From IMG/VR virus record IMGVR_UViG_3300036715_000626, positions 62,001-126,000 of that record: a stretch of DNA of 64,000 bases. The stretch is one strand, 5' to 3'. The notes under the pieces are model-generated. The model had not been told where the DNA came from. It searched no databases and worked only from the letters and a program-made list of their open reading frames with translations. The stretch's first letter is position 1. Every line of letters starts with the position of its first letter. Of this stretch, positions 3,485 to 38,281 are shown piece after piece. Made by a program: the position numbers and the translations under genes.

Positions 3485-4732
3485 ATCTCCATCAAAGTCA
3501 GCATTGGACGACTTAGCGATGAGACCCGAGATACCAATAGTGTTATCATAGGTATCTGTTTTAAACTTACCTATATACACTGCTTGTGATGAACCTTGTA
3601 GTAGACTTGGATTCCGTTGTGCTAAGACCATAATCTTTCTGTCAGGCGCTTCGTTAATGAGTTCCTGTAACAGTTCATCGATAAGCGGTATGTACCGTTT
3701 AACCGCGTCAAACAGCATGTTACTTGCTTTCTTATACGTCATTTTACGTTGATTAACCAACTTGTTTATAAGATGAGGTCTAAACGCAGTTACTCCGATA
3801 GCCCAAGGTACCCATATCTCGTCATGACGATGTTTACCAGGGATACTTGTAATAACTGATCTGAAAGTAAAATGTGATCTTGCTCCGTATACATGCTTAC
3901 GAAATAATCCTACTTTCTTAGTAATATACCGTTCATAGTAGTTATGATACAATGAAGCTAATTTAGAAATAACTACCGATGTATGAGATGCATTTTTACG
4001 ATGGCTTTGTTTCTCACTTGTAGAGTTAATCTTAATCCACGTCATAACAACATCAATAACATCCGATACCGCTAAGTTAATAAATTTACCTTTAGTGGTA
4101 TTTTCCATAACGAAGAGTTTCTTATTGATAATCGGTAAATAGTTACTGAAGATGAGATCCTTTTGATGGGTATACATGTCCAATAACAAATACAAGTTAT
4201 CTTGTTTATCGATATCTTTAAACTTAGCATGGTTCATCAGATACTGAATGATTTCAGGGAGTTTGATAATAAAGTTCTTATAAGAACGTTCTACCATAAT
4301 CTCTTTGATACCATGAGTAAAGTTTTGGAGTTCCACCGGTGGGTTATACATTGGATCAGTCATCCATCGTACATAATCGATTTTCTTATCGAGAATGTTA
4401 CGTAGCATCAACCAGTAAGCTGGGTTGATAAATTCTAACCCATCTTCTAATTTTTCTAACCAAAGCATAGGATCTACTTTTTCATGCACTTCTTTACAGA
4501 CAGTACCGCATGAACTACATACTTTTTCAAGTAGATAGCGACCTTTAAGGTTACCACAATCACAGGAAGGAATAGTAGATAGTATATCACTGTCATAAAC
4601 AGTAATCAGTTGGTTGTTAACTTCTTCGATGTCATCTACTGAGAAATGATCTAGGTTGTTAACGATTACTTTAAACCCTGTGGAGTGTGCGAAGAATTCG
4701 TCGAAATTGACTAAACGTTGTGTGATAGCCAT
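3485..4732 (-). CDS. non-virion RNAP beta' subunit, exon 1 (phiKZ gp55-like)
   Basis: Zn ribbon CDC...CSSC; RNPSL; catalytic NADFDGD immediately before the intron. Confidence 0.9.
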
Positions 4733-7223: not shown

Positions 7224-7314
7224 TGGTGGGTGCGGTAGGATTCGAACCTACGACGTTTCTTTAAATGTGGTCGATTATGAGTCGACAGGGCTCGACCGCT
7301 GCCCGTACACACCC
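7224..7314 (-). tRNA. tRNA with CAT anticodon (elongator Met or Ile2), long variable region
   Basis: GGGTGTG/CGCACCC acceptor, GTCGA-CTCATAA-TCGAC, GTAGG-TTCGAAT-CCTAC, encoded ACCA. Confidence 0.85.
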
Positions 7315-7923: not shown

Positions 7924-9786
7924 TTAATAACGACCGAAACCCATATTAGAGTATCCGGTACCGAAGTTCGGCCCAGCGCTAATATTTTGACGAGCAAACC
8001 CAGAGGCATTTGTAATACCAGTGTTTTGATAGTGTTGTCCAACAAGACCGATATTGGTGTTTTCTGTAAACACGATTTCTGGTTCGTAACGAACATCAAG
8101 ACCGGCTGCTGTTGCTGCGTTTGCAAGAGTTGTGATAAAGTCAGCTGTGAATGTAACACGGATAGCTTTACCAGCGATTTCTGCATCAGGCATGATGCGA
8201 GATATGACATCTACACGATTGATAAATGGATCAGATCCACCATTCAAATCACGTGGAAGTGATGAGTAGACATATTTGTTCATAACCGCGGTATCACCAT
8301 TTTTAGCGCATACGAATGCCAAGTCGACATCACGGATATCGCGCTCACCAGATTTATCAGCCCAAACACCAGTAGGTACAACAACACCAGAAGTAGCGAA
8401 GATGTTACCGATTGGGAAATCTGATGGGAAGTTACCATCTGTCAACCAGTTAGCTGCTGCGATAAGCTCTTTAGCCGCTGCTGTTTTGTTTTCGTTGTTA
8501 CCCGGTTGGGCCGCCTGTGAGAATATCGAAAGATATGATGTTTGTGGTCCGAATGACGGAATATCCAAAGATACTACCGGCGCAAGACTGAACATTTGAC
8601 CAATGATCCCGTAGATTTCATCTGTGGTATTTTTCTTACTTGTAAGATCAAGTACCGCGCCGATACCATTAGGATTACCTTCAAGGTTGGTGATCATGTT
8701 CAATACACCTGGGGTACGATCGTTACGTGGAGTAAGAGCTGCCATCCACATATTCTTTTGAGTCATAACCATACCGGCGATCAAACCAAGAAGTGCGAAA
8801 CCTGTTGTAGGCATAGCCACCGCATCACTTGTAATCACAATATGTGGTTTAAGACGTAGTTGTGATACCATAGGCATACCTGGAACTTGCGTTTGAACAT
8901 TGTCAGGAATAGCATCGATATAACCAGAAACCGCAGCAAGTGTTTGACGACCAGTGTCAGCGTTCAACGAATGGAATTGTTGTTGTGTGTTAACACGTAA
9001 CAATTCGATACGCCAGTCTGTACGTACTGGGCGACCTGATTCATCACGAGATACAGGGTTACCCATATTTGACTCTATTTTAAGCATTGATTCACCAGAA
9101 CGACCGACCGCTTCACGGATATTCAAATCACGGGTTGTGCCGCTCGTAAGAGCTGCTTCTACGTTCAACGCGTTGAATGCAATTGGCGCGATACGACGCG
9201 CAAGCGTCGCAACATCTTCATGTGTAGCATGTACGACAAGACCGTCAACGGTGACAAATTCAGTATTTTCACCGTACTCTTTAGAAAGTGCAGATACGAT
9301 GATACGCATCAATTCAGAATCGATTGCGTCGTCAGTTGTGAAGATAAATGGACGAGTATTTGTTTTAATCGCTTGGTTAACTTCATTTGTGATTTCGATC
9401 GCTTTCATAGGACGGCGACCAGTGTCCTCGAGAAGTAACGTATAGTAGTTAACTACGCCGCCGTCCGATTTAGAAATCACGATAGTGCTGTACGCAATAC
9501 CAGTAAAAATTTCTTTGTCAATAACCGTCACACGAGGACGTTGTGCGGTTAGAATTGGTTTGAACGTTTCCAACAATGCGTTACCGATGTTCATAGTATA
9601 TTCTGAACCTTGGTTAGTGGACATTGTGTAAATGTCACGACCGCCAAAACCTATTCCCATAGGGGTTTGCATTTTAGCACCCATATTTGATTTAAGATCT
9701 GCAACTGCTGCGGCTGTTTGCGTAGCTCCTACTGAAGCACCTGCGTTTGGTTTTTGATTGTTGTTAGCATCTGAGTTTACACCCAT
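7924..9786 (-). CDS. chmA: phage nuclear shell protein chimallin (phiKZ gp54-like)
   Basis: 620 aa; flexible N- and C-terminal tails; G.PVR.D motif; lies upstream of nvRNAP beta' as in Chimalliviridae. Confidence 0.8.
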   Translation of the reverse strand: MGVNSDANNNQKPNAGASVGATQTAAAVADLKSNMGAKMQTPMGIGFGGRDIYTMSTNQGSEYTMNIGNALLETFKPILTAQRPRVTVIDKEIFTGIAYSTIVISKSDGGVVNYYTLLLEDTGRRPMKAIEITNEVNQAIKTNTRPFIFTTDDAIDSELMRIIVSALSKEYGENTEFVTVDGLVVHATHEDVATLARRIAPIAFNALNVEAALTSGTTRDLNIREAVGRSGESMLKIESNMGNPVSRDESGRPVRTDWRIELLRVNTQQQFHSLNADTGRQTLAAVSGYIDAIPDNVQTQVPGMPMVSQLRLKPHIVITSDAVAMPTTGFALLGLIAGMVMTQKNMWMAALTPRNDRTPGVLNMITNLEGNPNGIGAVLDLTSKKNTTDEIYGIIGQMFSLAPVVSLDIPSFGPQTSYLSIFSQAAQPGNNENKTAAAKELIAAANWLTDGNFPSDFPIGNIFATSGVVVPTGVWADKSGERDIRDVDLAFVCAKNGDTAVMNKYVYSSLPRDLNGGSDPFINRVDVISRIMPDAEIAGKAIRVTFTADFITTLANAATAAGLDVRYEPEIVFTENTNIGLVGQHYQNTGITNASGFARQNISAGPNFGTGYSNMGFGRY

Positions 9787-11104: not shown

Positions 11105-11109
11105 GAAAA

Positions 11110-11180
11110 AAATAGGCTGGATTCGAACCAGCGACCGATAGCCCTTGCGGGCTATAACTCTACCACTGAGCTACTATATA
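11110..11180 (-). ncRNA. anticodon-less tRNA-like small RNA
   Basis: TAGCTCAGTGGTAGAG D arm; ATAGCCC-GCAA-GGGCTAT in place of the anticodon arm; GCTGG-TTCGAAT-CCAGC T arm; weak acceptor, no CCA, ends in a T-run. Confidence 0.7.
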
Positions 11181-20008: not shown

Positions 20009-21862
20009 ATGGTAGTCCTAAAATTAAAACCGTGGGAACCTATAAACGGGCTCGTGCATGAATCTACCACATGGCAGATAGCATCTGACTTAGGGTTTAC
20101 AAATATACTCGATAGTTTATTAACAAGTACAGAACATCTTACTGATTTTACAAGTACTGTTGAAGTTCCTCCTAATACTGTTTACTACAGTAGAGCTAAA
20201 CGATTTTTTACTAATGGAACGAGCGCTAGTTGGACAAATACTGAAAAACTAGTTAGTAAAAGTTTCATGTCTAATATCGTAACTTCTAAAAAGATAGTTA
20301 TCGATAAACCAATTGTTATTGTCGACAAAGCGAGTTTAGACCCATCAAGTGATAACATAGTCGTGCGTACATCATCTTTTAAAGGTGAGTATACCGATCA
20401 TATCAGTACCCATTGGATTATTACCAACGATAACGGAGAAGTGTGTTATAAGAGTATTAACGATACTGTTAATCTAACTACATTAAGTATCAATAAGTAT
20501 ATTAACAACTTAATGGATAAAAATGAGTTATTGATATTTGCTATACACAATGGTAATGAGAGTGTAGAAAGTCCTCTCGGTAAAACAAGCATATCTTTAG
20601 GTACATTTAACTATCGTATCTTAAGCAACACACAACGAGTATTGCCATATAATGACTTTGTTTTAAATATAGAAAAAATCGACGTATACGCACCTACACA
20701 TATAACAGGTATTTCGCTTATTAATCCGATTACTAATGAAGCTGTGCAAGAGCTGGTTGTTACAACTGATGATACTACTTTCACAATTCCCGGAGATGCG
20801 TTGTCTCCTTATGCTGAATTCTATTTAGATATTTACAGTATTGGTAATAATGGTATCTACAATTATAAACGCCGCTTACTTAAAACAATAGGTAGTTATC
20901 ATTCAGAAGCTGAGGATAGTGATTATGTTTACAGTAAGAGTTATGAAAGTTACGATTATACAGGAGTGAGTTCTTTAGTAAACATACCGACTAACTTCTA
21001 TACTGAAGAGTTACTAGATGGGTATTTTATATCGGCTAAAACCTTAGGTACCCGGTTATACAAATGTACTTATGATCGACTTACTAAATTGATTACTATG
21101 GGTGCTGTGTATAAGAATATCGGTTTACGGTATGGCGCTGAAGGTGCTAATGATCCAGTTAGCACTAACCATAATAATAACATATTCGTTAAACTATTTG
21201 ATACTAATTATTTACTTCTGGATAACGAAATGACATCTAACGGATCTATGTATCCAGTATTCACTATTTATAGATATCGCCCAAATACAGATGATTTTAT
21301 ATTAATCAGTAGTACACATCTACGTTCAGATGAATTTAGAGCTCTTGGATATACCAATAACTATCTACAAGAAACAGCTACCACGATATTATACATACCG
21401 TATAAGAATAATGTTATTAAACGTTTAGATTTATCTACAGGTAATATAAATATTATAACCACAACACCTTTAGATACCGATGGAGTTAATCTAATATTTG
21501 AGGTGAATAGTGACATGTACATTGTGATAGGTAGTAACACACCTAAAGCATACTACTACGAACCGAGTTCCGGAATATATACAGAAGCATTCGTAATACC
21601 TACACTCTTTAGAAATAAACATTTAAAAGCTAATAAACTTATAAATGGTGATGTCGCTATTACTATAGTAGAACCTATAGACAGTAATGATACGTATCAC
21701 GGTGTATTGTATTTTAATAAAGCAAAAAATCAAATTTCATTAATAGAAACTACTACCATGGTAGATAGCTGGTATCCTGATGTTAACATCAAATTAAAAA
21801 CAGGTGAGTTATTATTGTTAAAAGGTAATGATAGTAATTCTAAATATGCTGTATTACAATAG
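20009..21862 (+). CDS. putative virion structural protein (beta-rich, propeller-like C-terminal half)
   Basis: 617 aa directly upstream of the sheath; repeated xLxxGxxL units. Confidence 0.65.
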   Translation: MVVLKLKPWEPINGLVHESTTWQIASDLGFTNILDSLLTSTEHLTDFTSTVEVPPNTVYYSRAKRFFTNGTSASWTNTEKLVSKSFMSNIVTSKKIVIDKPIVIVDKASLDPSSDNIVVRTSSFKGEYTDHISTHWIITNDNGEVCYKSINDTVNLTTLSINKYINNLMDKNELLIFAIHNGNESVESPLGKTSISLGTFNYRILSNTQRVLPYNDFVLNIEKIDVYAPTHITGISLINPITNEAVQELVVTTDDTTFTIPGDALSPYAEFYLDIYSIGNNGIYNYKRRLLKTIGSYHSEAEDSDYVYSKSYESYDYTGVSSLVNIPTNFYTEELLDGYFISAKTLGTRLYKCTYDRLTKLITMGAVYKNIGLRYGAEGANDPVSTNHNNNIFVKLFDTNYLLLDNEMTSNGSMYPVFTIYRYRPNTDDFILISSTHLRSDEFRALGYTNNYLQETATTILYIPYKNNVIKRLDLSTGNINIITTTPLDTDGVNLIFEVNSDMYIVIGSNTPKAYYYEPSSGIYTEAFVIPTLFRNKHLKANKLINGDVAITIVEPIDSNDTYHGVLYFNKAKNQISLIETTTMVDSWYPDVNIKLKTGELLLLKGNDSNSKYAVLQ

Positions 21863-21919
21863 CATATCGTTTAAATTTTTAAGTTATTAAATGATTTAAA
21901 TATCCCGAAGGAGCAAATT

Positions 21920-24900
21920 ATGGGCTTGTTTAACAACGCATCTCCAGATGTCATTATGCTGGGAGCTAATGACCTAAGCATTAGACAGATTCCGGTATCG
22001 GATCAACCGATTCCACAACACTTACCACTTTTTTATATGTTCTCTGAAAAAGGTCCAACAAAACGTAACTTGGTAGGTGGTTCGGGTCTTACCAATCTCT
22101 ATGGTTCAAAAACTTTTGATATCAATGGTAAATACTTTAACCACCAAACACGTTTCCTACAATCTATCGCTGGTACAGGTAATACTTGTATGGTAAACCG
22201 TCTTGTACCACTTGACGCGGGTGATGAAGCTAATGCTATTATCTACGCATGTGTTCTTGATACCGCTAACAAAAATATCATTGCTCGTAACAGTGATGGG
22301 AGTTATAAAATTGATCCTAGTACCGGTAGTTATGTTATTGATGGTACTGATTCTGTTTATAGTATCACCTTTATGAAAGAGTATACTGGAGATCTTCCTA
22401 AAACTTCGCCGGTTCCAGCTGTTAGCAGTTATGCTAATGGTTTGCATTACCAAAATAACGCTGTGATGTCTTCAGGTACAACAACTGCTGGTGGCTGGTC
22501 TAAATATGGTGAGCTTCCGTTAGATACTGTCTACGCTGGGGCGTATGGTTCCGGTCAATTGAGTAAACATCAAGTTGTTGAAACTAATAGTCGTGTTTAT
22601 ATCATTGGCGGTTTTGAGCAAACTCTTAACGCGCCTAGTGATGCAATCTATTCAGCTTTGAAATACGCTGACGGTAGTATCGGAGAATTCACACTTGAAA
22701 ACTTCAAACTACCACGCGGGGTAGCAGGACATAAATGTCTTATTACAAATGGTTATTTATATGTTATCGGCGGATTATCTTCAGATACAACTTTGAACAA
22801 TGTTTATAATTATGCTATCGATGTTGATGGTACTATTATTCCTGGTACGTATACAGCGCAAGCAAATCTTCCGATACCGGCTAACGGAAGTCAAGTATTT
22901 GTTGTTGGAAGTAAGATCTATTGTGTTGGTGGTGCCGGTAATACAACAATCGCGTATGCGAGTATCGGTAGTAATGGTATCATCAGTAGTTGGTTTACCT
23001 ACACTGGAGCTGGTTACACTATCGATGGTACAAATACTTTAAAAGATGCTGGTGTGTTTGTTACCGCTAAACGCGATAACGCTACAGACGGTATTGCTTA
23101 CAAAGTGTATTTGATTGGTGGTATTAAAACTACTAATGCCGGAGTAGAGAGTCTGTCTTCTACAGTATACCAGTTGATCTTTAACGAAAATGGACAACCG
23201 CTTACATCATTGAGCGGCCAAACATTTATCAAAGCTAATACAGGTGTTTTACCAGCTACTATGGCTGCGTTCCAAATGTATGCTACTAAAGATAAGATTC
23301 ATATCTTTGGAGGGTTAACCGATGGAAATGTTGCTAATATTGAAAAAGTAAGTACTGTTGCGTATACACTTGAACTCGATGCCAATCAAGATTTCATTAT
23401 TGACTCAGTAAGCGGTACTTTGTTTAAAGCTAAAGCCGACTACGATAGTACTTATGTAGGATCCGCATATGGTCAATTGTTTGTAACAACAACCCGTATT
23501 TATGTAGTGGGTGGGTACGCAGGTACTAATTTACCTGTCAACGGTTACGCCGGTGCGTTAGTACCAACGCATGTTTACTACAACGCGGTATTCTCTACTT
23601 TGATCAATGATGGATGGTTAATTAAAACTAACTACGCGTCAGCAGTACCAATGGCTCCTAAGGTTGATATTGGTGCGGTATGCGCTAAACCTATTAAAAT
23701 GGGTAGTTCTACAGGTATAGCTTATCCTATTTTTGAATTCCGTGCTAAAGAAAAAGGTGCATATTACAATAACTTGGCATTTAGTATCTCTCCTATTCGC
23801 GGATCTGACGTTGACACCAAAGCATTACTTGCTAATAAAGCATTAGAGTATACTCTTGCATTGTACTCACGCCCGGATGTAAACAGCTCACCGTCGGTTA
23901 TTCGTAGTTTATACGGTGAAACATCGCTACCATTTACATTTAAAGAAAAAGCTATTCACCCGGTAACAGGTATTCGCTACGATCTTGAAAATGTATTTGG
24001 AAATAACTGGTACAACGAAACCGATAACTTGCTTCCGTACAAACCGTATGAGTTTGACAACATTCATGTTTACCATGATAACATTGACAAACTTTTAACT
24101 ATGTTCATGAAGCGTGAAGCTAGTTATATCGACAGTACTACTATGACATGGTACGATTTTACAACTGATAATGCTACATTGTTGGTACAAGACGAGCGTT
24201 ATCTTTTAGATATGTTTACTTGTAATTCAACATCAGGTATTCCTTACAGTACTCTTGAGTACTTTAAAGATGGTTTAGCGGAACTTACTCCGTATCAATC
24301 AGAAATCATGTTGACTTCAAATACACCGGTATTCTTATCAGGTGGATCTGATGGTAGTCTTACTAATGAGATGTTCGAACTTCTTGTTAAACAAGATCTT
24401 TTGAAATATAACGATACTGAATCAGACGTACAAGATATGGCTATAAACGTTGAGTCTATTCTTTGGGATTCAGGCTTTACAGTTCCTACAAAAATGGAAT
24501 TGGCAAACTTCATTTCATTGCGTAAAGATACTGTTCTTGCGTTGTCAACGCATGATGCATCAATGGGTAACAAAAACTATACTCTGTCACAAGAGCGCGC
24601 TATTGCAGTAGCTTTGAGATCACGTCTTAACCTTACTCCTGAATCTGAGTATTATGGAACGGGTGTAGCTCGTGCTATCATTGTTGCTGGTACTGGTAAC
24701 TTACGTGACGGATCTACCGATGAGCGTATTCCGTTGATCTACGATATCGCTATGAAATCAGCTACCATGATGGGTGCCGGTAATGGTAATTGGAAACAAG
24801 AGTTTTTGTTCGATAAAGCTCCTGGTAATATCGTTACTACTCTTACCAATATCAAACCTGACTTCATTCCGGCTGGTGTTAAACCTACGTTGTGGGCTGA

Positions 24901-25303
24901 TGGAATCGTATGGGCACAACCATTCGATAGAACACAATTCCATTTCCCTGCTATTCAAACAGTGTACTCCGATGATACATCAGTATTGAATTCATTCTTT
25001 ACAGTTATGGTATTGGCGACCTTGAATAAAATTGGTGCTGATGCATGGCGTAACTTTACTGGTTCAACTGCTCTTACTAACGGACAGTTTATCGATGCAG
25101 TTACTGCATATGTAAACAAAAAACTAGTAGATCGTTTTGCTGGTATGGTTACTGTTGTTCCTGAAGTTGTTATTACCGAAGAAGATGCCATCAGAGGCTA
25201 TAGCTGGCGGTTAGTTAACAAACTCTATGCTTCTAATATGAAAACCAAAATGGTATATAGTACAGAAGTATATAGAGCATCTGATCTCACTACGGGAGCT
25301 TAA
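21920..25303 (+). CDS. tail sheath protein (phiKZ gp29-like) with inserted Kelch domain
   Basis: PQHLPLFY..SEKGP; YPIFE..A...G; GGSDG; WDSGF; PES.YYGT..RA; much longer than gp29. Confidence 0.85.
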   Translation: MGLFNNASPDVIMLGANDLSIRQIPVSDQPIPQHLPLFYMFSEKGPTKRNLVGGSGLTNLYGSKTFDINGKYFNHQTRFLQSIAGTGNTCMVNRLVPLDAGDEANAIIYACVLDTANKNIIARNSDGSYKIDPSTGSYVIDGTDSVYSITFMKEYTGDLPKTSPVPAVSSYANGLHYQNNAVMSSGTTTAGGWSKYGELPLDTVYAGAYGSGQLSKHQVVETNSRVYIIGGFEQTLNAPSDAIYSALKYADGSIGEFTLENFKLPRGVAGHKCLITNGYLYVIGGLSSDTTLNNVYNYAIDVDGTIIPGTYTAQANLPIPANGSQVFVVGSKIYCVGGAGNTTIAYASIGSNGIISSWFTYTGAGYTIDGTNTLKDAGVFVTAKRDNATDGIAYKVYLIGGIKTTNAGVESLSSTVYQLIFNENGQPLTSLSGQTFIKANTGVLPATMAAFQMYATKDKIHIFGGLTDGNVANIEKVSTVAYTLELDANQDFIIDSVSGTLFKAKADYDSTYVGSAYGQLFVTTTRIYVVGGYAGTNLPVNGYAGALVPTHVYYNAVFSTLINDGWLIKTNYASAVPMAPKVDIGAVCAKPIKMGSSTGIAYPIFEFRAKEKGAYYNNLAFSISPIRGSDVDTKALLANKALEYTLALYSRPDVNSSPSVIRSLYGETSLPFTFKEKAIHPVTGIRYDLENVFGNNWYNETDNLLPYKPYEFDNIHVYHDNIDKLLTMFMKREASYIDSTTMTWYDFTTDNATLLVQDERYLLDMFTCNSTSGIPYSTLEYFKDGLAELTPYQSEIMLTSNTPVFLSGGSDGSLTNEMFELLVKQDLLKYNDTESDVQDMAINVESILWDSGFTVPTKMELANFISLRKDTVLALSTHDASMGNKNYTLSQERAIAVALRSRLNLTPESEYYGTGVARAIIVAGTGNLRDGSTDERIPLIYDIAMKSATMMGAGNGNWKQEFLFDKAPGNIVTTLTNIKPDFIPAGVKPTLWADGIVWAQPFDRTQFHFPAIQTVYSDDTSVLNSFFTVMVLATLNKIGADAWRNFTGSTALTNGQFIDAVTAYVNKKLVDRFAGMVTVVPEVVITEEDAIRGYSWRLVNKLYASNMKTKMVYSTEVYRASDLTTGA

Positions 25304-25336
25304 GACAAGTTCTTAAGTATATCTTAGAAAGAAAAT

Positions 25337-26212
25337 TTGGAGGAACAAATGACAGTCGCAGACGCAATTTTACAAAAGGGTAGCGTATACGCAGGACACG
25401 GTCCTGCAGCTAACTTAATCTATGGTGGTCAAAATGGCCCAATGGCAAAAATAGGTATGAAGGGACCTGACGGAAAAAACTACGATGAATGGATTTCCAA
25501 TCAAGCGTATGTCCGTCGTAACATCATTCCTATCGTTCTTCGTTATCCTAAGTTCTTTGACTTTATGCCGGATAAAGATAAATGGATTGCCACGTACAAA
25601 GCACTTATTGAACTTCACGCACTCACTATTGATGGGTTAAGTTCTGGTCTTAGTGTTGAGACTGACGAACATCCTGTCGGTGGTGCTGGTGAGATGCAAG
25701 AAGAGATTACTAACGTAACTCGTGCTCGTAGTACACTTACATTTACCTACAAAGAAAAATCTGGTAAAGCTATTCAGAAGTTCTTGGATTACCTTATTCG
25801 TTATGGGTATATGGATCCAGATGCTAAACGTCCTTTGGTATCACAATACATTACTAAAGTCGCGGATATCAGTAATATGTATACTGCTGATTACTATACT
25901 GGTACGGTTATCTTCATCGAGCCAGATATTACACAGAAACTTGTAGTTGATGCTTGGTTATGTACTAACATGTTCTTTAAAGGGAATGGTGATCGTACAG
26001 GTAAACGTGACGTACACAGCGCTGGAGAAGTTCCAGAGTACAGCATCGAATCTTCATGTATCACAATGAATAATGAAGCAGTGTTTACACTTGCTGACAG
26101 TATTCTTTCATCTCTTACTGTTCTTACTACTCTTCCTGATACAGGAATTGTTGTTCCAAGTTCAGGAGTAGATAGCGCATTAGCTGCTACTAAAACCGGA
26201 TTTAATTCATAA
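25337..26212 (+). CDS. tail tube protein (phiKZ gp30-like)
   Basis: 291 aa directly after the sheath; W.SNQAYVRRN; EPD...AWL..NMF. Confidence 0.8.
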   Translation: MEEQMTVADAILQKGSVYAGHGPAANLIYGGQNGPMAKIGMKGPDGKNYDEWISNQAYVRRNIIPIVLRYPKFFDFMPDKDKWIATYKALIELHALTIDGLSSGLSVETDEHPVGGAGEMQEEITNVTRARSTLTFTYKEKSGKAIQKFLDYLIRYGYMDPDAKRPLVSQYITKVADISNMYTADYYTGTVIFIEPDITQKLVVDAWLCTNMFFKGNGDRTGKRDVHSAGEVPEYSIESSCITMNNEAVFTLADSILSSLTVLTTLPDTGIVVPSSGVDSALAATKTGFNS

Positions 26213-26215
26213 TAT

Positions 26216-26248
26216 CATACACTACATAGCATTGCTATGTAGTGTATG
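26216..26248. terminator. bidirectional terminator
   Basis: 16-bp arms, 1-nt centre. Confidence 0.7.
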
Positions 26249-26812: not shown

Positions 26813-26874
26813 GTCCAAATTTTTTTAGAGTATCTTATTACATACTCTTTTTTTGATTATATAAAGGATACACT

Positions 26875-28170
26875 ATGGCACAAATTACTAATAGAATAGA
26901 ATCATCAGTTATTACTAACCTACAAAGTACCAAATTCGATGTAGCTTCAGAAGCAGTAGCAGTAGCTGGTAAAGAATCACTATCCACAATAGCAGCGCAA
27001 AGTAAACTTTTATCAGCTGGCGGTTGTGCTAGTGCATTAGGCGGTCTTGGTGCTAGTGCATTGGGTTCACTAAGCGGTCTTGGATTAGACGCATTAGGTC
27101 TAAGTGGAGTTAATGAAAAACTAGGTATCTTTAAAGGATCGTTAGCTGCAGCTAAATCACTGTTACCATCATCAGCTACGTTAGCAGGTCTTAAAAACGC
27201 CATTCCTAGAGGCTTACCACCTAAGAGTATATGTGGTATAAGTCTAAAGAATCCTATGGCGTCTATGTCTACTATTCTTAGTGCACAAGGACTAGATACT
27301 AAAAGTCTAATATCCAAAGCTGGGTTACTGGAATCTAAATTATTGGATTCGGTACTTACAAATGATACTAAGAAATTATTAAATAATGCTATAGGTACTG
27401 CTAATGGTTTAAGCTCTGTTAGTATATCTAAAATAAAAGATAGTATTAGTAAACAACTTAGTTTATCAGGCGGTAGTCTTAAAGATAAATTGAATCTTGT
27501 TAAGCTTATAAGTAGCGGAGTAGACATAAATAAAATCTCTGCTTTATCCAAAACCAAGAAGCCAGTGACCATAGCTACCAATACAGCGATCATAAACCAC
27601 CTCACAACGATCGATCCTAGTTTAGCTGCCTCGTATATCCAACAAGCACTAAACGACACGTCTAGCACTAATACTGTGATGACTAAAGAGATCATCATGA
27701 CAAGTATGGCTTCATCACTAACAGCTAACAATGATACACATGTAGAATCTAAGTTATTATTGTTATCAAGCCTAGCAACTACTATAAAAACTGGGTCAGC
27801 TAAAGAGAGTGCCACTTTAAGTGTTGCTACTAAAGGTGTTACAGATAAAGTACTCGCTAATCTAAGTACAGCTGATACGAGTAATTCTACTAGTCCTGTG
27901 AGTGACTATAACAATATAATCACTTCGTTAAACACACTGGACGCTAGTTGGAACAAAGATTCGTTAGGCGAAATAAACTATTCTGTTGTTATGCGAAATA
28001 AACGACTAGTTACATTATCCAATAAGCTAATAGCTACAAATAACGTAGCTCCTGTATTAAATGGTAATGCTGATACAACATTACCAGATTATTTACAAAT
28101 TGCTATATTAAGTAGTATCGCAGGTAACACTGAAGCTCCTGTCAGTAGATGCTCTAAAATAGCCATATAA
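26875..28170 (+). CDS. putative virion structural protein
   Basis: 431 aa, S/A/L/G-rich, within the tail gene cluster. Confidence 0.65.
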   Translation: MAQITNRIESSVITNLQSTKFDVASEAVAVAGKESLSTIAAQSKLLSAGGCASALGGLGASALGSLSGLGLDALGLSGVNEKLGIFKGSLAAAKSLLPSSATLAGLKNAIPRGLPPKSICGISLKNPMASMSTILSAQGLDTKSLISKAGLLESKLLDSVLTNDTKKLLNNAIGTANGLSSVSISKIKDSISKQLSLSGGSLKDKLNLVKLISSGVDINKISALSKTKKPVTIATNTAIINHLTTIDPSLAASYIQQALNDTSSTNTVMTKEIIMTSMASSLTANNDTHVESKLLLLSSLATTIKTGSAKESATLSVATKGVTDKVLANLSTADTSNSTSPVSDYNNIITSLNTLDASWNKDSLGEINYSVVMRNKRLVTLSNKLIATNNVAPVLNGNADTTLPDYLQIAILSSIAGNTEAPVSRCSKIAI

Positions 28171-33545: not shown

Positions 33546-33575
33546 ACTAACTGACGCATAGATGCGTCAGTTAGT
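33546..33575. terminator. terminator after vRNAP beta
   Basis: 14-bp arms, AG centre. Confidence 0.7.
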
Positions 33576-36500
33576 TATAAGAATTTAGCATCCTTTTTCA
33601 AAGGATCTTTTTTCTGCATTTCTTTCCACTGGTCAAAAGTTATTACTTTAAACCCATCGATAGTTGTTCCGTCAATAGAAAATAATGATTTATCATTTAC
33701 ATTAGGTACAGCTATTTCATGGATAAAACTTAGATTACCAATATCTAACTGTGCACATTCTGAACCAGGTTTACAATTAGGTTTGTTCAGTTCCTTTTGA
33801 ATTTTTTCAAAGACATCTTTTTTAATACCTATATCCAAATCATTAGGATACCGCAATCCATGTATACCAAGAACAATACTTCCAAATAAAACAATAGAGT
33901 TTTTAGGTACGTCATGTTCAGAACAAAATGTTTTTAGCTCATCTAGCAGAGATTTAACACGCTTACTAATAACATCTTTTGAAGTTTTATCAACCTCTTT
34001 TAATCCTTCAGTAGCTACATCTCCAAAATACATATCGAGTGCTTTATCAGTTATAACAGACAATAATGTGCTAGTTGTCCCTATTAAATCGGGAGAGTTA
34101 ACAATCCTTGCTTTAATCGAAGTATTAGAGAACACAAGATCTATTTCTTTGTTATCCATAGTCTTCATATCATACTCGTATACTTCACCAACAGTAAACT
34201 TAAGTTGGTTACCTAAAATAGCTTTATCTCCGATACCCATAGTGTCTAGTACTTGGATATATATTTTTATTTCTACTTGGTCTGGTAATAATGATGTGCC
34301 ATTAACCCGATAGGTAGAATTAACACGACCCGTTTGTCCTACATCATGTTTAAGATCTTCATCAGTAAGCGCGATTAGATCTTGTAACGATTTAGACATG
34401 GTATCTAATTCACAATTGTAGTAAACTACTATTTTACTAATAGTCCCGCGCAACTTAGCTTTAGGAGAAACGTTTTTAAGATTTTGTAGAATTGCTAACG
34501 CTCGTTCGTCTAACTCTTTACCGTTAATAGAGATACCATCAGTTATAGTAAACAATACGTCACTAGGTTCTAATAAGGTTCCTTTCGGTTTAATGCCAAT
34601 TATATTATCAGTATTGCTAACAATGATAGATTTAACCTTAGTAACGGTAGCAGCCATCTCTTGATTCATTCTCTTAGAGATAGCAGCAGAGTCTTCAAAA
34701 GTTTGAATATCTTCCATCAACGCAACATTAACATAAATACCAGATTTGTAAATAACACGTTTACGATTAAACACATCTGGTTCGAAGAAACTAGTAGCAT
34801 ATGCTAATGTATCATCTTTAACTACAGTATCACCTACTATAAGAGAAGTAGTCATATAGTGGGTGTAACAACTACCAGATTCTTCTTTAGTAGTCCAAGA
34901 ACTTAATTTAATACGCTCTTGTTTTTTATCACTATACATAACCACAATTTCGGATTTAGTTACTTTAGTAACAATTCCGTCAGTACGAGCAATTTTAACA
35001 TATTTACCAGCTGCTTTAATAGGTAAGATAGCTTCATAACCAGTACGTACAAATGGAGCTCTCATATTGATCATCGGGATAGTATGTGAGTTCTGAATAT
35101 TGACGAAGTTCAATCTTTTTACATCCTCAGTTATTGCGAACGGAGCTAGCATAGAACTCGTGCTGAGTATGCTAGAGAATCCATTAGCATCGATGTCAAA
35201 ATTACCCACGATACCACGAGTATTAGATAAATTAGGATTAGCAGACATATAGGCGCTAATACCAACATCACCGCTATCTGGAGAAGATTCAGAAACTAAT
35301 CCTATCTCGCTACTATGCATTTCGCGAGTATCTCTAGACATACCTTCTTTACTTCTACCACCATGCCCTAAGTAGGTAATGGTTTCTGCTTGTTTCACTA
35401 TAGTAATAGGATTAAGATCATCAACCATAACCGTAGTGCTATCCTGATCTATTTTATTAACAACAGCATACGGATATACAGTCATTTTACTTCTACTAAA
35501 GAAACTACGATTACGGTGTTCTTTAATACTATTTACTAATTCACTATAGAGTATAGCAGAGATGCGTTCGTAACCTTTGATACTCATTTCGGTAATATTA
35601 TTAGGATTATTATAATTGTCATCAGAAAGTAAGTCAACTGCTTTTAACAACATACCTTTAAAGTTAACAGGTTGTTTAAGTTGCTCTAGAATAGTCATAG
35701 TCGTAGGATCTATAAACATTTCTTCTAAAAGTTTAATCTCGTTGATATATAGAATACTGAGCTTCATTAAGTTGAAAATGTTAGCAAACTTAGATCGTGT
35801 ATTCAAAGTATCTTTAGGAACACTAACTAAAGTAGTGTTCATAGTAGATAATCCATAGAATACCATATCAGCTTGTTTATGTGTTTTTTCAAAAATATAT
35901 TTATAATCTTTAAACGTTACTACATATTCATTAGCTGCTATGGTTGTTCGTACACTCATAGGAACTATTCTAAACTCAGGTTTTAACAAATGAATAAGAT
36001 TATCAAACCCAATATAATACGCTAGTAAAAATCCTACCGGAAATTGTTCCTTATAAATGCGCACATTAGCATATTCAATAGGTCCAGAATCTTTATGGAT
36101 ATTTAACATCTTAAAGATATCATCGATCTCATGATACTTCTTACCTTCATATCGATACAGCTTACTGTTCATATCCATTACAACAGGAGTAGTTCCAACA
36201 GTACCAACCATAACAGTACCATTATCCTCTATACCTTTAAGCATATCATCAGTCAGGTCTTTTATCATTTTCTTACGGTTATAGTAATCAAAACTAAAGG
36301 AAATGTTTCCGTAACGGAAAGCTTTAATATATCGAGATATAATATTGTAATCTTCAGGAAGAACAGCATCAATATTTTCAATAGTGAGCATAACAATATC
36401 TTTAAGTTTATTGTCTACTTCATATTTAGCTATAAGTTGTTTTCTAAACCAGTAGCCGATGTCATCTTTCTTAAAGGTAGCATTAGTTACGAATAGTTTA

Positions 36501-38281
36501 CCATACTGACTTGACAACGCCACAGTACCACGATCGATTTTACGTATAGGAAGATCCGCACGCATTTTTCTCATCGTATACGTATTACCGGCTAACTTGA
36601 AGGTTCCATCTTCGTTTACCTTCGGTAGTATAACTTTGATAGTAGATGGCTTACCATTAAGAGAAGTCATTTTAACAGTATGCGTTTCAGTTCCACCTAG
36701 AACAGATTCTTCTTCAACCACAGTATGTTCTTCTATAATATTACCAGTATTCTGAACTGCTTGGAAGGTTCTAACGATATCCTTATGCAGCTGTTCTTTA
36801 ATGTATTTTTTATCAATATTAACAACAGTATTGGTGTTGTATTCTTTATCAAAGACAACGGCGTTATCTTCAATTTTAGTATCTTGCTTAGAAACAGCAT
36901 AGTTATCTTTAGAAGTATCTAACAATCCACCCAGTGTAATATCATCATTCTCATATGGAGACTTAGCTTCATTTTGAGTTGTTATTATAGATTGTAATCG
37001 AGCAGATTCTTTCTTAGACATGTAGCCGGATTCACCAAGTACCGATATCTCAGTACTTAATTTATTAATAGGATCGATCTTTTCACTATAGAGAGCTGTT
37101 ATGGTACTTACAGTAGGTGCTGGGGCAATATTCTCTATAATATCATTAAGTTCAGAACTGGTTGTTTTAACAACCTCAGGTTCAGTATCCATATCATCAT
37201 CTGCGAGATCATTACTCTCTACGACGTCATCATTTTTCTCAGGTATGTTTTTATCAAGAACTGAATCGATGTCCACAACAGTAGTTGTGTCACCCACAAC
37301 AGTAGTTTTATCTGTAAGTTCGGTTTTACCAGTAGCTGTGACATCAGATAGTTTAATGGCGATATCTTTATCGTCTTTATCATTAGCGATAGTATCTAGA
37401 GATTCAGATTTACCATTCAGTGTTCTGAATAACATCACGTACAATAACTTACGAACAGTAGCTGCTTTATACTTAGCTAACTTACCTAAACGAGTTTCAG
37501 TGGTGTATTCAGCAACGATACTGGATAACACATTTAGATTAACCATAACTAACTTATTGTCTAGATTCAATAACAATGTTACTTTGTCTAACATACCGTT
37601 ATCGATTTTACTAAATATACTCGACTCTTTTAATTCAGGGGTTAAATACTTCCAGAGTTCTAATACATTCATATACCGATAATCGGTAAAGATATTTAAA
37701 GAACTTCTTGACAGATTAGCTGCGGCTCTGTCAAATTGTTGTCTGGATGGTAATGATGGCGGTAGATCCAGCAATATAAAAACATTACGATCAGTTACAT
37801 ATTTGTTACCACTAGTATTTGCAATTACCGTTTCCATAACATTACTATACTTGTAGTATTCCGCTAACGGGTTAATTACATACTTATACATATGGTTAAG
37901 AGAACCATAGTTAATAACTAAAAGATCCCTAGATAACATAGGAACTGTTTTAACATTTGGTTTAATAAACTTAAAGATCTTTTCATTTTTAGATATTTCT
38001 GTAATTACCGATAACGGAGTTAAGTTCAAATGTCGAAAATGCCCCAATAGCGGAATTTCAGGATACGTCAATATAGTATCTACAAAAAGCTTACCAGGTA
38101 TCTTATCGAAATAAGCATACTCTTTAGTCGGGTTAACTGTTAGATCAGATACTTTTGACCAATGAAAGATGGTGTCCAATGGAAATATAAATTCTTTAGC
38201 ATTTAGGATTACTGGTTCCAGAAAGTTAGATATCTTTCTAATACCGTATTTTCGATAGTGTTGTTCAAAGTGTAATAACAT
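33575..38281 (-). CDS. virion RNAP beta subunit (phiKZ gp178-like) with C-terminal nucleotidyltransferase-like domain
   Basis: TYLGHGGRS; G.VSESSPDSGDVG; NFVNIQNSH; FEDS; GDK...NQLK motifs; extension GS-x12-DLD. Confidence 0.9.
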   Translation of the reverse strand: MLLHFEQHYRKYGIRKISNFLEPVILNAKEFIFPLDTIFHWSKVSDLTVNPTKEYAYFDKIPGKLFVDTILTYPEIPLLGHFRHLNLTPLSVITEISKNEKIFKFIKPNVKTVPMLSRDLLVINYGSLNHMYKYVINPLAEYYKYSNVMETVIANTSGNKYVTDRNVFILLDLPPSLPSRQQFDRAAANLSRSSLNIFTDYRYMNVLELWKYLTPELKESSIFSKIDNGMLDKVTLLLNLDNKLVMVNLNVLSSIVAEYTTETRLGKLAKYKAATVRKLLYVMLFRTLNGKSESLDTIANDKDDKDIAIKLSDVTATGKTELTDKTTVVGDTTTVVDIDSVLDKNIPEKNDDVVESNDLADDDMDTEPEVVKTTSSELNDIIENIAPAPTVSTITALYSEKIDPINKLSTEISVLGESGYMSKKESARLQSIITTQNEAKSPYENDDITLGGLLDTSKDNYAVSKQDTKIEDNAVVFDKEYNTNTVVNIDKKYIKEQLHKDIVRTFQAVQNTGNIIEEHTVVEEESVLGGTETHTVKMTSLNGKPSTIKVILPKVNEDGTFKLAGNTYTMRKMRADLPIRKIDRGTVALSSQYGKLFVTNATFKKDDIGYWFRKQLIAKYEVDNKLKDIVMLTIENIDAVLPEDYNIISRYIKAFRYGNISFSFDYYNRKKMIKDLTDDMLKGIEDNGTVMVGTVGTTPVVMDMNSKLYRYEGKKYHEIDDIFKMLNIHKDSGPIEYANVRIYKEQFPVGFLLAYYIGFDNLIHLLKPEFRIVPMSVRTTIAANEYVVTFKDYKYIFEKTHKQADMVFYGLSTMNTTLVSVPKDTLNTRSKFANIFNLMKLSILYINEIKLLEEMFIDPTTMTILEQLKQPVNFKGMLLKAVDLLSDDNYNNPNNITEMSIKGYERISAILYSELVNSIKEHRNRSFFSRSKMTVYPYAVVNKIDQDSTTVMVDDLNPITIVKQAETITYLGHGGRSKEGMSRDTREMHSSEIGLVSESSPDSGDVGISAYMSANPNLSNTRGIVGNFDIDANGFSSILSTSSMLAPFAITEDVKRLNFVNIQNSHTIPMINMRAPFVRTGYEAILPIKAAGKYVKIARTDGIVTKVTKSEIVVMYSDKKQERIKLSSWTTKEESGSCYTHYMTTSLIVGDTVVKDDTLAYATSFFEPDVFNRKRVIYKSGIYVNVALMEDIQTFEDSAAISKRMNQEMAATVTKVKSIIVSNTDNIIGIKPKGTLLEPSDVLFTITDGISINGKELDERALAILQNLKNVSPKAKLRGTISKIVVYYNCELDTMSKSLQDLIALTDEDLKHDVGQTGRVNSTYRVNGTSLLPDQVEIKIYIQVLDTMGIGDKAILGNQLKFTVGEVYEYDMKTMDNKEIDLVFSNTSIKARIVNSPDLIGTTSTLLSVITDKALDMYFGDVATEGLKEVDKTSKDVISKRVKSLLDELKTFCSEHDVPKNSIVLFGSIVLGIHGLRYPNDLDIGIKKDVFEKIQKELNKPNCKPGSECAQLDIGNLSFIHEIAVPNVNDKSLFSIDGTTIDGFKVITFDQWKEMQKKDPLKKDAKFL

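What the first reader, a model, noticed from the sequence alone, without database searches (positions are those of the whole stretch)
22390..23665. Six-bladed Kelch beta-propeller inserted into the tail sheath protein
Seen: between gp29-like segments lie ~425 aa with six hydrophobic-GG motifs (VYIIGGF, LYVIGGL, IYCVGGA, VYLIGGI, IHIFGGL, IYVVGGY), making the sheath 1127 aa. Known: phiKZ gp29 is ~695 aa, and sheath outer domains tolerate insertions (usually Ig-like or beta-sandwich). Inference: hundreds of propellers coat the tail, acting as adhesin/lectin, armour or a contraction regulator. I know of no described Kelch-armoured sheath.
Basis: partly seen in the sequence, partly recalled or inferred. 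Interest (0 to 1): 0.75.

Follow-up and report, generated by a model that had tools for sequence, protein, structure and literature searches.

The report
Kelch propeller built into phage sheath
An uncultured nucleus-forming jumbo phage from microbial mats has a six-bladed Kelch propeller spliced into a surface loop of its only tail sheath protein, at a site where related uncultured phages carry other large modules, so the tail is probably coated with a likely host-binding domain.

Summary
Window 21920-25303 (+) is one 1127-aa ORF. Residues 1-160 and 595-1127 are a phiKZ gp29 / phiKp24 gp118-type tail sheath. Residues ~161-594 are an in-frame insertion that folds as a six-bladed Kelch propeller, with top matches to solved Kelch domains.

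The insert sits in a beta-hairpin loop of the outward-pointing gp29PR domain. It is the only sheath gene in the 205-kb genome, and the tube gene follows it. The insert is real coding sequence: independent assemblies span both junctions, no insert-free form was seen, and it is under purifying selection. It is not intein-like.

Two further phages share the architecture and form one clade. No cultured phage in the collection has it, and no paper I found describes it.

The same loop is an insertion hotspot. Of 148 related metagenomic sheaths, 16 carry 200-630 aa there, in several unrelated module families. One of these is an RCC1-like propeller.

Function is inferred, not shown. The insert's nearest relatives are Kelch arrays in tail-collar fibre-like phage proteins. 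phiKZ's Kelch virion protein gp298 is needed for adsorption to some hosts. The fastest-evolving part of the insert is the B-C loops. A multivalent tail-surface adhesin is therefore the best guess. It is a new variant of a known kind.

The parts
21920..25303 (+). Tail sheath gene, 1127 aa; the only sheath gene in the 205-kb genome
   Evidence: PHROG 3242 at E 4.6e-163. PDB 8au1 at E 9.9e-68. The full-length AF2 model aligns to 8au1 at Z 47.7 over 648 residues and to phiKZ gp29 9xpf at Z 45.2. The own genome holds a single match.
21920..22399 (+). Sheath N-terminal segment (res 1-160): N-terminal extension, part of the inner sheath, and the first strand of the outer-domain hairpin (res 140-154)
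   Evidence: Aligns to 8au1 residues 7-134. pLDDT is above 90 for residues 30-158. Insert-free relatives align up to about residue 160.
22400..22498 (+). N-side linker (res 161-193); low model confidence but conserved sequence
   Evidence: pLDDT is below 50. It is 79% identical to P0001, similar to the sheath core. Its HYQN-type motif is also present ahead of the propellers of fibre-like Kelch proteins.
22499..23590 (+). Six-bladed Kelch beta-propeller (res 194-557). Approximate blades: 22571-22732, 22733-22888, 22889-23050, 23051-23263, 23264-23467 and 23468-23590. The N-terminal strand at res ~194-198 probably closes blade 6.
   Evidence: Six hydrophobic-GG motifs. Pfam Kelch hits. AF2 model. 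Foldseek hits in PDB, BFVD and Swiss-Prot are all Kelch. In the full-length model, residues 174/211-563 align to RAG2, LZTR1 and NanM/YjhT propellers at Z 20-21.
23591..23701 (+). C-side linker (res 558-594)
   Evidence: pLDDT is below 50 for residues 563-587. It is 78% identical to P0001.
23702..25300 (+). Sheath C-terminal segment (res 595-1127): return strand of the hairpin, the rest of the gp29PR outer domain, the C-terminal domain and the C-terminal extension
   Evidence: Pfam PF20961 at residues 601-812. 8au1 residues 184-689. pLDDT is above 90. The gp29PR crystal fragment 3spe (gp29 residues 103-381) aligns to model residues 102-812, which brackets the insert.
25337..26212 (+). Tail tube gene (291 aa), immediately downstream
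   Evidence: Pfam Phage_TTP_14 at E 6e-71. The order is the same in L005, L006 and L007.
20009..21862 (+). Conserved upstream ORF (617 aa), function unknown, syntenic in the other two Kelch-sheath phages
   Evidence: A 608-aa ORF and a 617-aa ORF lie directly upstream of the sheath in L005 and L006. No Pfam or PHROG hit.
26216..26248 (+). Terminator-like hairpin after the tube gene
   Evidence: A 15-bp stem followed by a T-rich tail. This is a consensus match only.

Best explanation
What it is (shown): the major tail sheath protein of an uncultured nucleus-forming jumbo phage (chimallivirus). A ~434-aa module, made of two ~30-aa linkers and a six-bladed Kelch propeller, has been inserted into the loop of a beta-hairpin in the outward-pointing gp29PR domain. 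The parts of the sheath that bind the tube and neighbouring subunits are intact.

How it most likely works (inferred): each subunit displays one propeller on the outside of the tail. That would be six per ring, and roughly 260-280 per virion if the tail has 44-47 rings as in phiKZ and Goslar. The propeller probably binds a host-surface or matrix ligand, most likely a glycan, through the face formed by its fast-evolving B-C loops. This would give weak, highly multivalent, reversible side-on attachment that concentrates virions on cells or in the mat matrix before the baseplate commits.

Origin (inferred): the module looks borrowed from the Kelch arrays of fibre-like receptor-binding proteins. 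The hairpin loop is a general 'display socket' into which related phages have plugged other modules.
For: Sheath identity and intact core.

Insert position in the outer-domain hairpin. PMC9700779 states that the gp29PR-like outer component points outwards and is not involved in inter-subunit contacts during assembly.

Kelch fold.

Every subunit carries it: the genome has only one sheath gene.

The insert is real and translated:
- Logan contigs of a second sample span both junctions, and no deleted form was seen.
- dN/dS is 0.15 in the insert.
- Of 19 listed strain-level SNPs inside the insert, 15 are synonymous.
- GC content equals that of the rest of the gene.

Conserved in a clade: P0001 (80% identical overall) and P0004 (51%) have the same architecture and synteny. 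The three are monophyletic with support 1.0.

Adhesin inference:
- The nearest sequence relatives of the insert are tail-collar (PF07484) plus multi-Kelch proteins on phage-like contigs.
- The only INPHARED hit above noise is annotated as a tail fibre.
- phiKZ gp298, a Kelch virion protein, is required for adsorption to some hosts (PMC12676376).
- Variation is concentrated in the B-C loops. They are 39% identical to P0001, against 70% for the other loops and 68-93% for the strands (Fisher p 1.7e-5). dN is 0.70 there, against 0.18 for the rest of the propeller.

Hotspot: 16 of 148 relatives carry 200-630 aa at the same loop, in several unrelated module families, including an RCC1-like propeller.
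Against: - No ligand, binding site or virion structure is known, and the phage is uncultured.
- B-C loops of Kelch domains are generally variable, so fast evolution there is not specific to binding. dN/dS in those loops is 0.30, not above 1, and dS is saturated.
- Assigning the B-C loops to the 'top' binding face rests on general Kelch topology, not on coordinates of this model.
- Eukaryotic Kelch domains mostly bind peptides, not sugars.
- Similarity to phiKZ gp298 is only at fold level (hhalign probability 64%).
- Blades 1 and 6 and both linkers are modelled with low confidence in the full-length model.
- Steric fit of the propellers in the extended and contracted sheath was not modelled.
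Confidence: 0.5

Rival explanations
1. Docking platform. The propeller is a protein-protein interaction module that anchors accessory fibres or whiskers along the tail shaft, as in 'hairy' jumbo phages, rather than binding the host itself.
For: Solved Kelch domains that match best are peptide or protein binders such as KLHDC10, KLHL3/12, LZTR1 and KLHDC2. Phage CBB, which has hair-like fibres along its tail, is unusual in encoding several Kelch proteins, one of them a virion component (PMC5259590). This genome also encodes three tandem paralogous 729-789-aa proteins, at least one of them Kelch-bearing, which could be such appendages.
Against: No partner has been identified. The fast-evolving B-C loops fit an external, changing ligand better than a co-inherited virion partner. 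The nearest relatives are distal parts of fibre-like proteins.
Confidence: 0.2
2. Armour or mechanical role. Neighbouring propellers contact each other and stiffen or stabilise the extended sheath, or tune contraction.
For: Outer sheath components of successive layers are proposed to interact electrostatically after contraction in phiKp24 (PMC9700779). The linkers are as conserved as the core, which suggests a fixed mounting.
Against: The same loop holds unrelated modules of 90 to 630 aa in related phages, and nothing at all in most, including all cultured ones. The sheath mechanism therefore does not need any particular module. The outer domain is reported not to take part in assembly contacts (PMC9700779). 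The propeller evolves 2-7 times faster than the core.
Confidence: 0.15
3. Shield or decoy. The bulky, fast-changing module masks conserved sheath surfaces from host sensors of phage structural proteins, or from environmental proteases and grazers.
For: Bacterial STAND-type receptors sense core phage structural proteins (PMC13581612; abstract only, seen). The diversity of modules at one surface site is what an evasion arms race could produce.
Against: This is purely circumstantial. Chimalliviruses already shield much of their cycle. The conserved inner sheath surfaces are not covered by an outward-pointing insert.
Confidence: 0.06
4. Enzyme. The propeller is a sugar-modifying enzyme of the NanM mutarotase or galactose-oxidase type that processes host surface glycans.
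For: E. coli YjhT/NanM (2uvk) is the Kelch match with the highest sequence identity (18%, Z 19.9). Related fibre-like proteins and gp298 carry NANM-type Pfam hits.
Against: The insert itself gives no NANM hit at E<=1. Catalytic residues were not examined. Identity is very low.
Confidence: 0.05
5. Not a functional part of the protein: an assembly chimera, or a selfish element (intein or intron) removed before the sheath assembles.
For: The module is large and lineage-restricted, and it is flanked by low-confidence linkers.
Against: Independent contigs cross both junctions, with no joint or deletion. Three divergent phages keep it in frame. dN/dS is 0.15 and strain SNPs are mostly synonymous. 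There is no Hint or endonuclease domain and no intron family in Rfam. The fold is Kelch. GC content matches the gene.
Confidence: 0.02

Closest known systems
phiKZ gp29 / phiKp24 gp118 / Goslar gp218 tail sheath (PDB 9xpf, 8au1; Pfam PF20961)
   Same: The core fold is the same: N- and C-terminal extensions, inner sheath domains and the gp29PR outer domain. The tube gene is downstream, and the phage is a chimallivirus.
   Different: Those proteins are 689-695 aa with a ~60-aa hairpin region. Here ~434 extra residues forming a Kelch propeller sit in that hairpin loop.
Multi-domain ('type 3') sheath proteins with extra outer domains (T4 gp18, phage 812, Ackermannviridae, AR9/PBS1; PMC9230969)
   Same: The principle is the same: additional domains are inserted away from the tube-contacting core and point outwards.
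   Different: The described extra domains are Ig-like beta-sandwiches, or alpha-helical in AR9/PBS1. No beta-propeller is described.
phiKZ gp298 and other free-standing Kelch virion proteins of jumbo phages (PhiPA3, Noxifer, PA7, PS119XW, CBB)
   Same: These have the six-bladed Kelch fold in virion proteins of related phages. gp298 is needed for adsorption to certain hosts.
   Different: They are separate, low-copy proteins, not part of the sheath. Sequence relation to the insert is marginal (hhalign probability 64%).
Tail-collar (PF07484) plus multi-Kelch fibre-like phage proteins (P0003, P0005, P0009) and the annotated AgentSmith tail fibre
   Same: These are the closest sequence relatives of the insert (26-31% identity). 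They share the blade register and the pre-propeller HYQN/QQQY-type motif.
   Different: There the propellers are C-terminal arrays of a fibre-like protein. Here a single propeller is an internal insertion in the sheath.
RCC1-like propeller sheath P0113 (found here, L007:4001-7210)
   Same: A gp29-type sheath followed by a tube gene, with a large beta-propeller at the same hairpin.
   Different: It has a seven-blade RCC1/WD40_RLD-type propeller that is unrelated in sequence, and it lies in a different branch of the sheath tree.
T4 Hoc-type Ig-like capsid decoration (from general knowledge, not tested here)
   Same: The concept is the same: a dispensable, highly multivalent surface domain giving weak adherence to glycans.
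   Different: Hoc is a separate protein on the capsid. Here the module is fused into the contractile tail's main structural subunit.

Membership tests
phiKZ gp29-type contractile tail sheath | Significant full-length sequence match to the family profile, on both sides of the insert | tested here: met
   PHROG 3242 at E 4.6e-163 in two stretches. PF20961 at 72.9 bits against a cut-off of 26. 8au1 at E 9.9e-68 and 9xpf at E 1.8e-61.
phiKZ gp29-type contractile tail sheath | Sheath fold with inner domains, outer gp29PR domain and N/C extensions | tested here: met
   The AF2 model (core pLDDT above 90) aligns to 8au1 at Z 47.7 over 648 of 689 residues, and to 3spe at Z 25.4.
phiKZ gp29-type contractile tail sheath | Genomic context: adjacent tail tube gene, single copy, chimallivirus gene set | tested here: met
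   Tube gene PF23806 at 25337-26212. Single sheath match in the genome. Nuclear shell protein, split RNA polymerase and DNA polymerase are in the window.
phiKZ gp29-type contractile tail sheath | Assembles around the tube and contracts | not testable with these tools
   Needs virions or recombinant polysheaths.
Kelch-repeat beta-propeller | Four to seven tandem ~45-65-aa repeats, each with a hydrophobic stretch followed by a GG doublet | tested here: met
   Six motifs at residues 226, 280, 333, 396, 460 and 527, spaced 53-67 aa apart. Outside the insert, only two other GG doublets occur in the whole protein.
Kelch-repeat beta-propeller | Pfam Kelch models above their curated thresholds | tested here: met
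   Kelch_1 at 33.8 bits against 20.1, and Kelch_6 at 27.0 against 25.3. The whole-domain model PF24681 falls below its cut-off (42.1 against 50), and only one or two repeats score individually.
Kelch-repeat beta-propeller | Closed six-bladed propeller of four-stranded blades | tested here: met
   The AF2 insert model is all-beta with about 4 strands per repeat and pTM 0.78. The top 50 PDB matches are Kelch-type propellers, mostly natural six-bladed Kelch domains; TM normalised to the target is up to 0.74, at probability 1.0. Blades 1 and 6 have lower confidence in the full-length model.
Kelch-repeat beta-propeller | Ligand binding on the face formed by the B-C and D-A loops | not testable with these tools
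   Only indirect evidence: the B-C loops are the fastest-evolving part.
Intein / self-splicing insertion | Hint domain or homing endonuclease, or an intron RNA family | tested here: not met
   No such Pfam hit. No Rfam intron in the window. The fold is Kelch. No spliced form appears in the assemblies.
NanM / YjhT sialic-acid mutarotase | Match to the NANM profile and its catalytic residues | tested here: inconclusive
   The insert gives no PF24996 hit at E<=1. The structural match to 2uvk is Z 19.9 with 18% identity. Catalytic residues were not examined.

The most novel reading that the evidence does not exclude
In chimalliviruses, the outer-domain hairpin of the gp29-type sheath is a natural modular display socket. 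Lineages swap in host-adhesion modules there: Kelch, RCC1 and several unknown folds of up to ~590 aa. This would turn the whole contractile tail into a ~270-copy, side-on adhesin that takes part in host or matrix recognition. It would be a receptor-binding role for the sheath itself, which is normally regarded as purely mechanical.
Probability: 0.3. Interest if true: 0.75.

Novelty: new variant of a known kind. Interest (0 to 1): 0.58.

Why it matters
Sheath proteins are treated as mechanical parts whose extra domains are small Ig-like decorations. Here a complete 360-residue propeller, of a type that a related phage uses for adsorption, is fused into every subunit. The same loop accepts unrelated modules of 90 to about 590 aa in other uncultured jumbo phages.

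If these modules bind ligands, then the tail shaft takes part in host or matrix recognition in dense habitats such as microbial mats, not only the baseplate and fibres.

There is also a practical point. The hairpin is a naturally validated site for high-copy display of large folded domains on a phage tail.

Tried and rejected
- **More members.** Scans of IMG/VR and of JGI metagenome contigs with the clade alignment confirmed no relatives. The clade therefore rests on three sequences, plus one near-identical fragment (P0002).
- **Other inserts at the hotspot.** Pfam at a lax E-value gave nothing credible except RCC1 in P0113. Two ESM Atlas searches gave only unnamed viral clusters at chance-level scores.
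- **Structure prediction.** Model coordinates are not exposed, so I could not measure where the hairpin tip lies or test steric packing.
- **Link to phiKZ gp298.** Profile comparison was marginal (probability 64%), so I claim only a shared fold.
- **gp29PR crystal-structure paper.** It is not held in the library.
- **Tandem 729-947-aa proteins beside the free-standing Kelch protein.** Pfam and PHROG searches found nothing.
- **Recent intragenomic duplication.** Rejected. The genome's own 789-aa Kelch protein is only 26% identical to the insert, no closer than proteins from other phages.
- **Recent foreign acquisition.** Rejected. The insert's GC content (0.40) equals that of the rest of the sheath and tube genes.
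- **Positive selection.** Not supported. dN/dS in the B-C loops is 0.30, with saturated dS.
Full report
**1. The observation**

The window carries one uninterrupted ORF at 21920-25303 (+), 1127 aa long. They begin at residues 226, 280, 333, 396, 460 and 527, spaced 53-67 residues apart. Outside the insert, only two other GG doublets occur in the whole protein.

The stated start, 22390, is one base out of frame. Codons begin at 22391.

**2. The flanks are a gp29-type sheath**

- PHROG 3242 'tail sheath' matches at E 4.6e-163 in two stretches.
- Pfam phiKZ_gp29PR matches residues 601-812, at 72.9 bits against a cut-off of 26.
- Among solved structures, the phiKp24 sheath 8au1 (689 aa) and phiKZ gp29 9xpf (695 aa) match query residues 1-134 and ~597-1126, with nothing in between.
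- The next gene, 25337-26212, is a tail tube protein (PF23806, E 6e-71).
- The window also holds a nuclear shell (chimallin-type) protein, split RNA polymerase beta subunits, a DNA polymerase and a gp181-like SLT protein.

The host genome of this gene is therefore a nucleus-forming jumbo phage. It is a 205,015-bp IMG/VR record with direct terminal repeats. Public runs that hold the gene are microbial mat and sediment metagenomes.

**3. Boundaries and position of the insert**

I aligned the protein with 95 insert-free relatives. These relatives have no residues opposite query residues 161-234, 261-300 and 305-593.

The insert is therefore residues ~161-594 (nt ~22400-23701). It lies between two strands of a beta-hairpin. 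The first strand covers residues 140-154, and the return strand covers residues 590-609.

The full-length AlphaFold model has pLDDT above 90 for residues 30-158 and 590-1110. It aligns to 8au1 at Z 47.7 over 648 residues, and to phiKZ gp29 at Z 45.2.

The protease-resistant outer fragment gp29PR (3spe, gp29 residues 103-381) aligns to model residues 102-812, so it brackets the insert.

The phiKp24 paper describes this gp29PR-like component as the tip of the subunit. It points outwards and is not involved in inter-subunit contacts during assembly (PMC9700779).

**4. The insert is a six-bladed Kelch propeller**

- Pfam Kelch_1 and Kelch_6 pass their curated cut-offs for one repeat. The whole-domain Kelch model is just under its cut-off.
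- I made a 12-sequence alignment of the insert with its two orthologues and with Kelch segments of phage fibre-like proteins. It shows six repeats in a common register.
- The AlphaFold model from that alignment is all-beta, with about four strands per repeat. The propeller blocks have pLDDT 80-90, and pTM is 0.78.
- Its 50 best PDB matches are Kelch-type propellers: KLHDC10, KLHL3, KLHL12, LZTR1 and KLHDC2, plus designed Kelch-like proteins. The best E-value is 6.6e-12, and TM normalised to the target reaches 0.74.
- Swiss-Prot models and viral models give the same answer.
- In the full-length model, which had only three sequences covering the insert, residues 174/211-563 still align to RAG2, LZTR1 and NanM/YjhT propellers at Z 20-21. 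Blades 1 and 6 and both ~30-aa linkers have low confidence there.

**5. It is real, translated and selected**

- Logan contigs from a second mat sample (X2) run across both junctions, at 21707-22914 and 23133-24079. No joint or deleted form appears in any of the four runs.
- Against the 80%-identical orthologue P0001 (locus L006), dN/dS is 0.15 in the insert and 0.08 in the C-terminal core. dS is close to saturation.
- Of the strain-level differences listed, 23 are synonymous and 9 are not. Inside the insert the split is 15 to 4.
- GC content of the insert (0.40) equals that of the rest of the sheath and tube genes.
- There is no Hint or endonuclease domain and no intron family.
- The genome holds only this one sheath gene.

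Unless the protein is processed, every subunit therefore carries a propeller. phiKZ has 44 hexameric rings and Goslar has 47 (PMC13250141, PMC13742148). By analogy, this phage would display about 260-280 propellers per tail. That number is an inference.

**6. Distribution**

- Among 50,697 phage records, 289 match the sheath, but none covers 80% of it. All match in two pieces that skip the insert.
- An insert-free relative, P0023, matches 225 of 285 records over 80% or more of its length. In the 60 records sampled, nearly all matches were a single piece, and spans were 1.8-2.0 kb where the match covered most of the query. Cultured relatives therefore lack large insertions.
- In the 5.8-billion-protein collection, the same architecture (Kelch plus gp29PR) appears in P0001 (1127 aa, 80% identical) and P0004 (1115 aa, 51% identical). 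Both have the same gene order: a ~610-aa ORF, the sheath, then the tube.
- An exhaustive HMMER search of 1.84 billion cluster representatives found no further Kelch-bearing sheath among the top hits.
- On a tree of the sheath core, the three Kelch sheaths form one clade with support 1.0. Its neighbours have different insert lengths.

**7. An insertion hotspot**

In the 148 closest representatives, the segment corresponding to query residues 128-603 has a median of 62 residues. However, 13 proteins have 130-146 residues there, and 16 have 200-630. In every case the extra residues follow an N-terminal part of 118-135 residues, so they sit at the same loop.

After trimming the conserved flanks, the inserts fall into several mutually unrelated families:
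- the Kelch trio;
- a ~586-aa module (P0043, P0054, P0057);
- P0058/P0060;
- P0048/P0064;
- P0022/P0026;
- a ~90-aa module shared by six proteins;
- a ~103-aa module;
- several singletons.

One singleton, P0113 (1069 aa), carries an RCC1-like propeller (PF25390, E 1.6e-50). Its gene is followed by a tube gene in two independent assemblies. The other modules have no Pfam or Atlas assignment.

Large insertions at this site are therefore common in uncultured phages. The Kelch version is one rare instance.

**8. Likely function**

Four lines point to adhesion.

(a) The insert's nearest sequence relatives are proteins that combine a phage tail-collar domain (PF07484) with arrays of Kelch propellers. 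They sit on phage-like contigs. The only credible hit among cultured phages is annotated as a tail fibre. The relation extends to a shared motif just ahead of the propeller.

(b) Kelch propellers are recurrent free-standing virion proteins in phiKZ-like phages (PMC5259590). A transposon study shows that phiKZ gp298, a Kelch virion protein, is required for adsorption to two wild Pseudomonas isolates but not to PAO1 (PMC12676376).

(c) Within the propeller, the loops that follow each GG doublet (B-C loops) are only 39% identical between the window and P0001. Other loops are 70% identical and strands 68-93% (Fisher p 1.7e-5). dN is 0.70 in the B-C loops, against 0.18 for the rest of the propeller and 0.10 for the core. 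By general Kelch topology these loops line the usual ligand-binding face. This assignment comes from established knowledge, not from this model.

(d) The same genome encodes three tandem paralogous proteins of 729-789 aa. One has a clear C-terminal Kelch propeller that is 26% identical to the insert. Kelch modules are therefore part of this phage's structural repertoire.

None of this shows binding. I put the adhesin reading at about 0.5.

The main rivals are:
- a docking site for accessory fibres;
- a mechanical or armour role, weakened by the fact that most relatives have nothing at this loop and others have unrelated modules;
- a shield against host sensors;
- an enzymatic role of the NanM type.

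**9. Comparison with what is known**

Extra outward-pointing domains in sheath proteins are well described. The survey of 112 sheaths reports Ig-like beta-sandwiches and, in AR9/PBS1, helical domains (PMC9230969).

Three full-text searches for sheath with Kelch, with propeller, or with insertions found no description of a propeller in a sheath.

The protein is a full member of the gp29 sheath family, and its insert is a member of the Kelch propeller class. What is new is the combination, and the recognition of the loop as a general insertion site. I class it as a new variant of a known kind.

Noticed in passing
L007:4001-7210 (protein P0113); also L008: A gp29-type sheath of 1069 aa from another uncultured phage carries an RCC1-like (WD40_RLD) beta-propeller at the same hairpin loop. 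A tube gene follows it, and it was seen in two independent assemblies.
   Followed up: partly
Proteins P0043, P0054, P0057, P0058, P0060, P0048, P0064, P0022, P0026, P0051, P0036, P0031: Metagenomic gp29-type sheaths of 883-1285 aa have inserts of 217-628 aa at the same loop. The inserts fall into several unrelated module families with no Pfam or Atlas assignment.
   Followed up: partly
L013:7798-14625 (= G000:C1 ~188797-195625, minus strand): Three tandem paralogous genes of 789, 755 and 729 aa. The 789-aa product has a C-terminal Kelch propeller (PF24681, E 5.4e-17). The other two align to it over their full length but give no Pfam hit. Two further unannotated genes of 819 and 947 aa lie on the same strand nearby. 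This may be a fibre gene block.
   Followed up: partly
window 7924-9786 (-), 3476-4732 (-), 33575-38281 (-), 41144-43267 (-): A nuclear shell (chimallin-type) protein, two RNA polymerase beta-type subunits and a DNA polymerase. Together they mark the genome as a nucleus-forming chimallivirus from microbial mats.
   Followed up: partly
window 1738-3075 (-): An HNH endonuclease ORF (445 aa) lies directly beside an RNA polymerase beta-subunit gene fragment (3476-4732). It may be a homing endonuclease associated with the split polymerase gene.
   Followed up: no
window 7224-7314 (-) and 11108-11180 (-): Two tRNA genes. One is an unusually long tRNA-Met (CAT), 88-91 nt. For the other, ARAGORN reports a two-base anticodon and no amino-acid assignment. 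Both pass the Rfam tRNA threshold.
   Followed up: no
window 26875-28170 (+) and 26838-27815 (-): A 431-aa Ser/Leu/Ala-rich ORF with no family match, syntenic with a 438-aa ORF in L005. It is overlapped almost entirely by a 325-aa antisense ORF that is probably spurious.
   Followed up: no
window 51489-56879 (+): A 1796-aa protein with a C-terminal SLT lytic transglycosylase domain. It matches the phiKZ gp181-like tail protein family (phrog_3201).
   Followed up: no
window 21707-22914 versus 23133-25700, in run X2: The strain in the second mat sample differs from the window by 2.4% across the 5' third of the sheath gene, but by only 0.4-1.0% across the rest. The gene may be a recombination mosaic.
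   Followed up: partly
Protein P0078: A 6548-aa metagenomic protein matches the insert in about 40 separate stretches, so it is a giant array of Kelch repeats.
   Followed up: no
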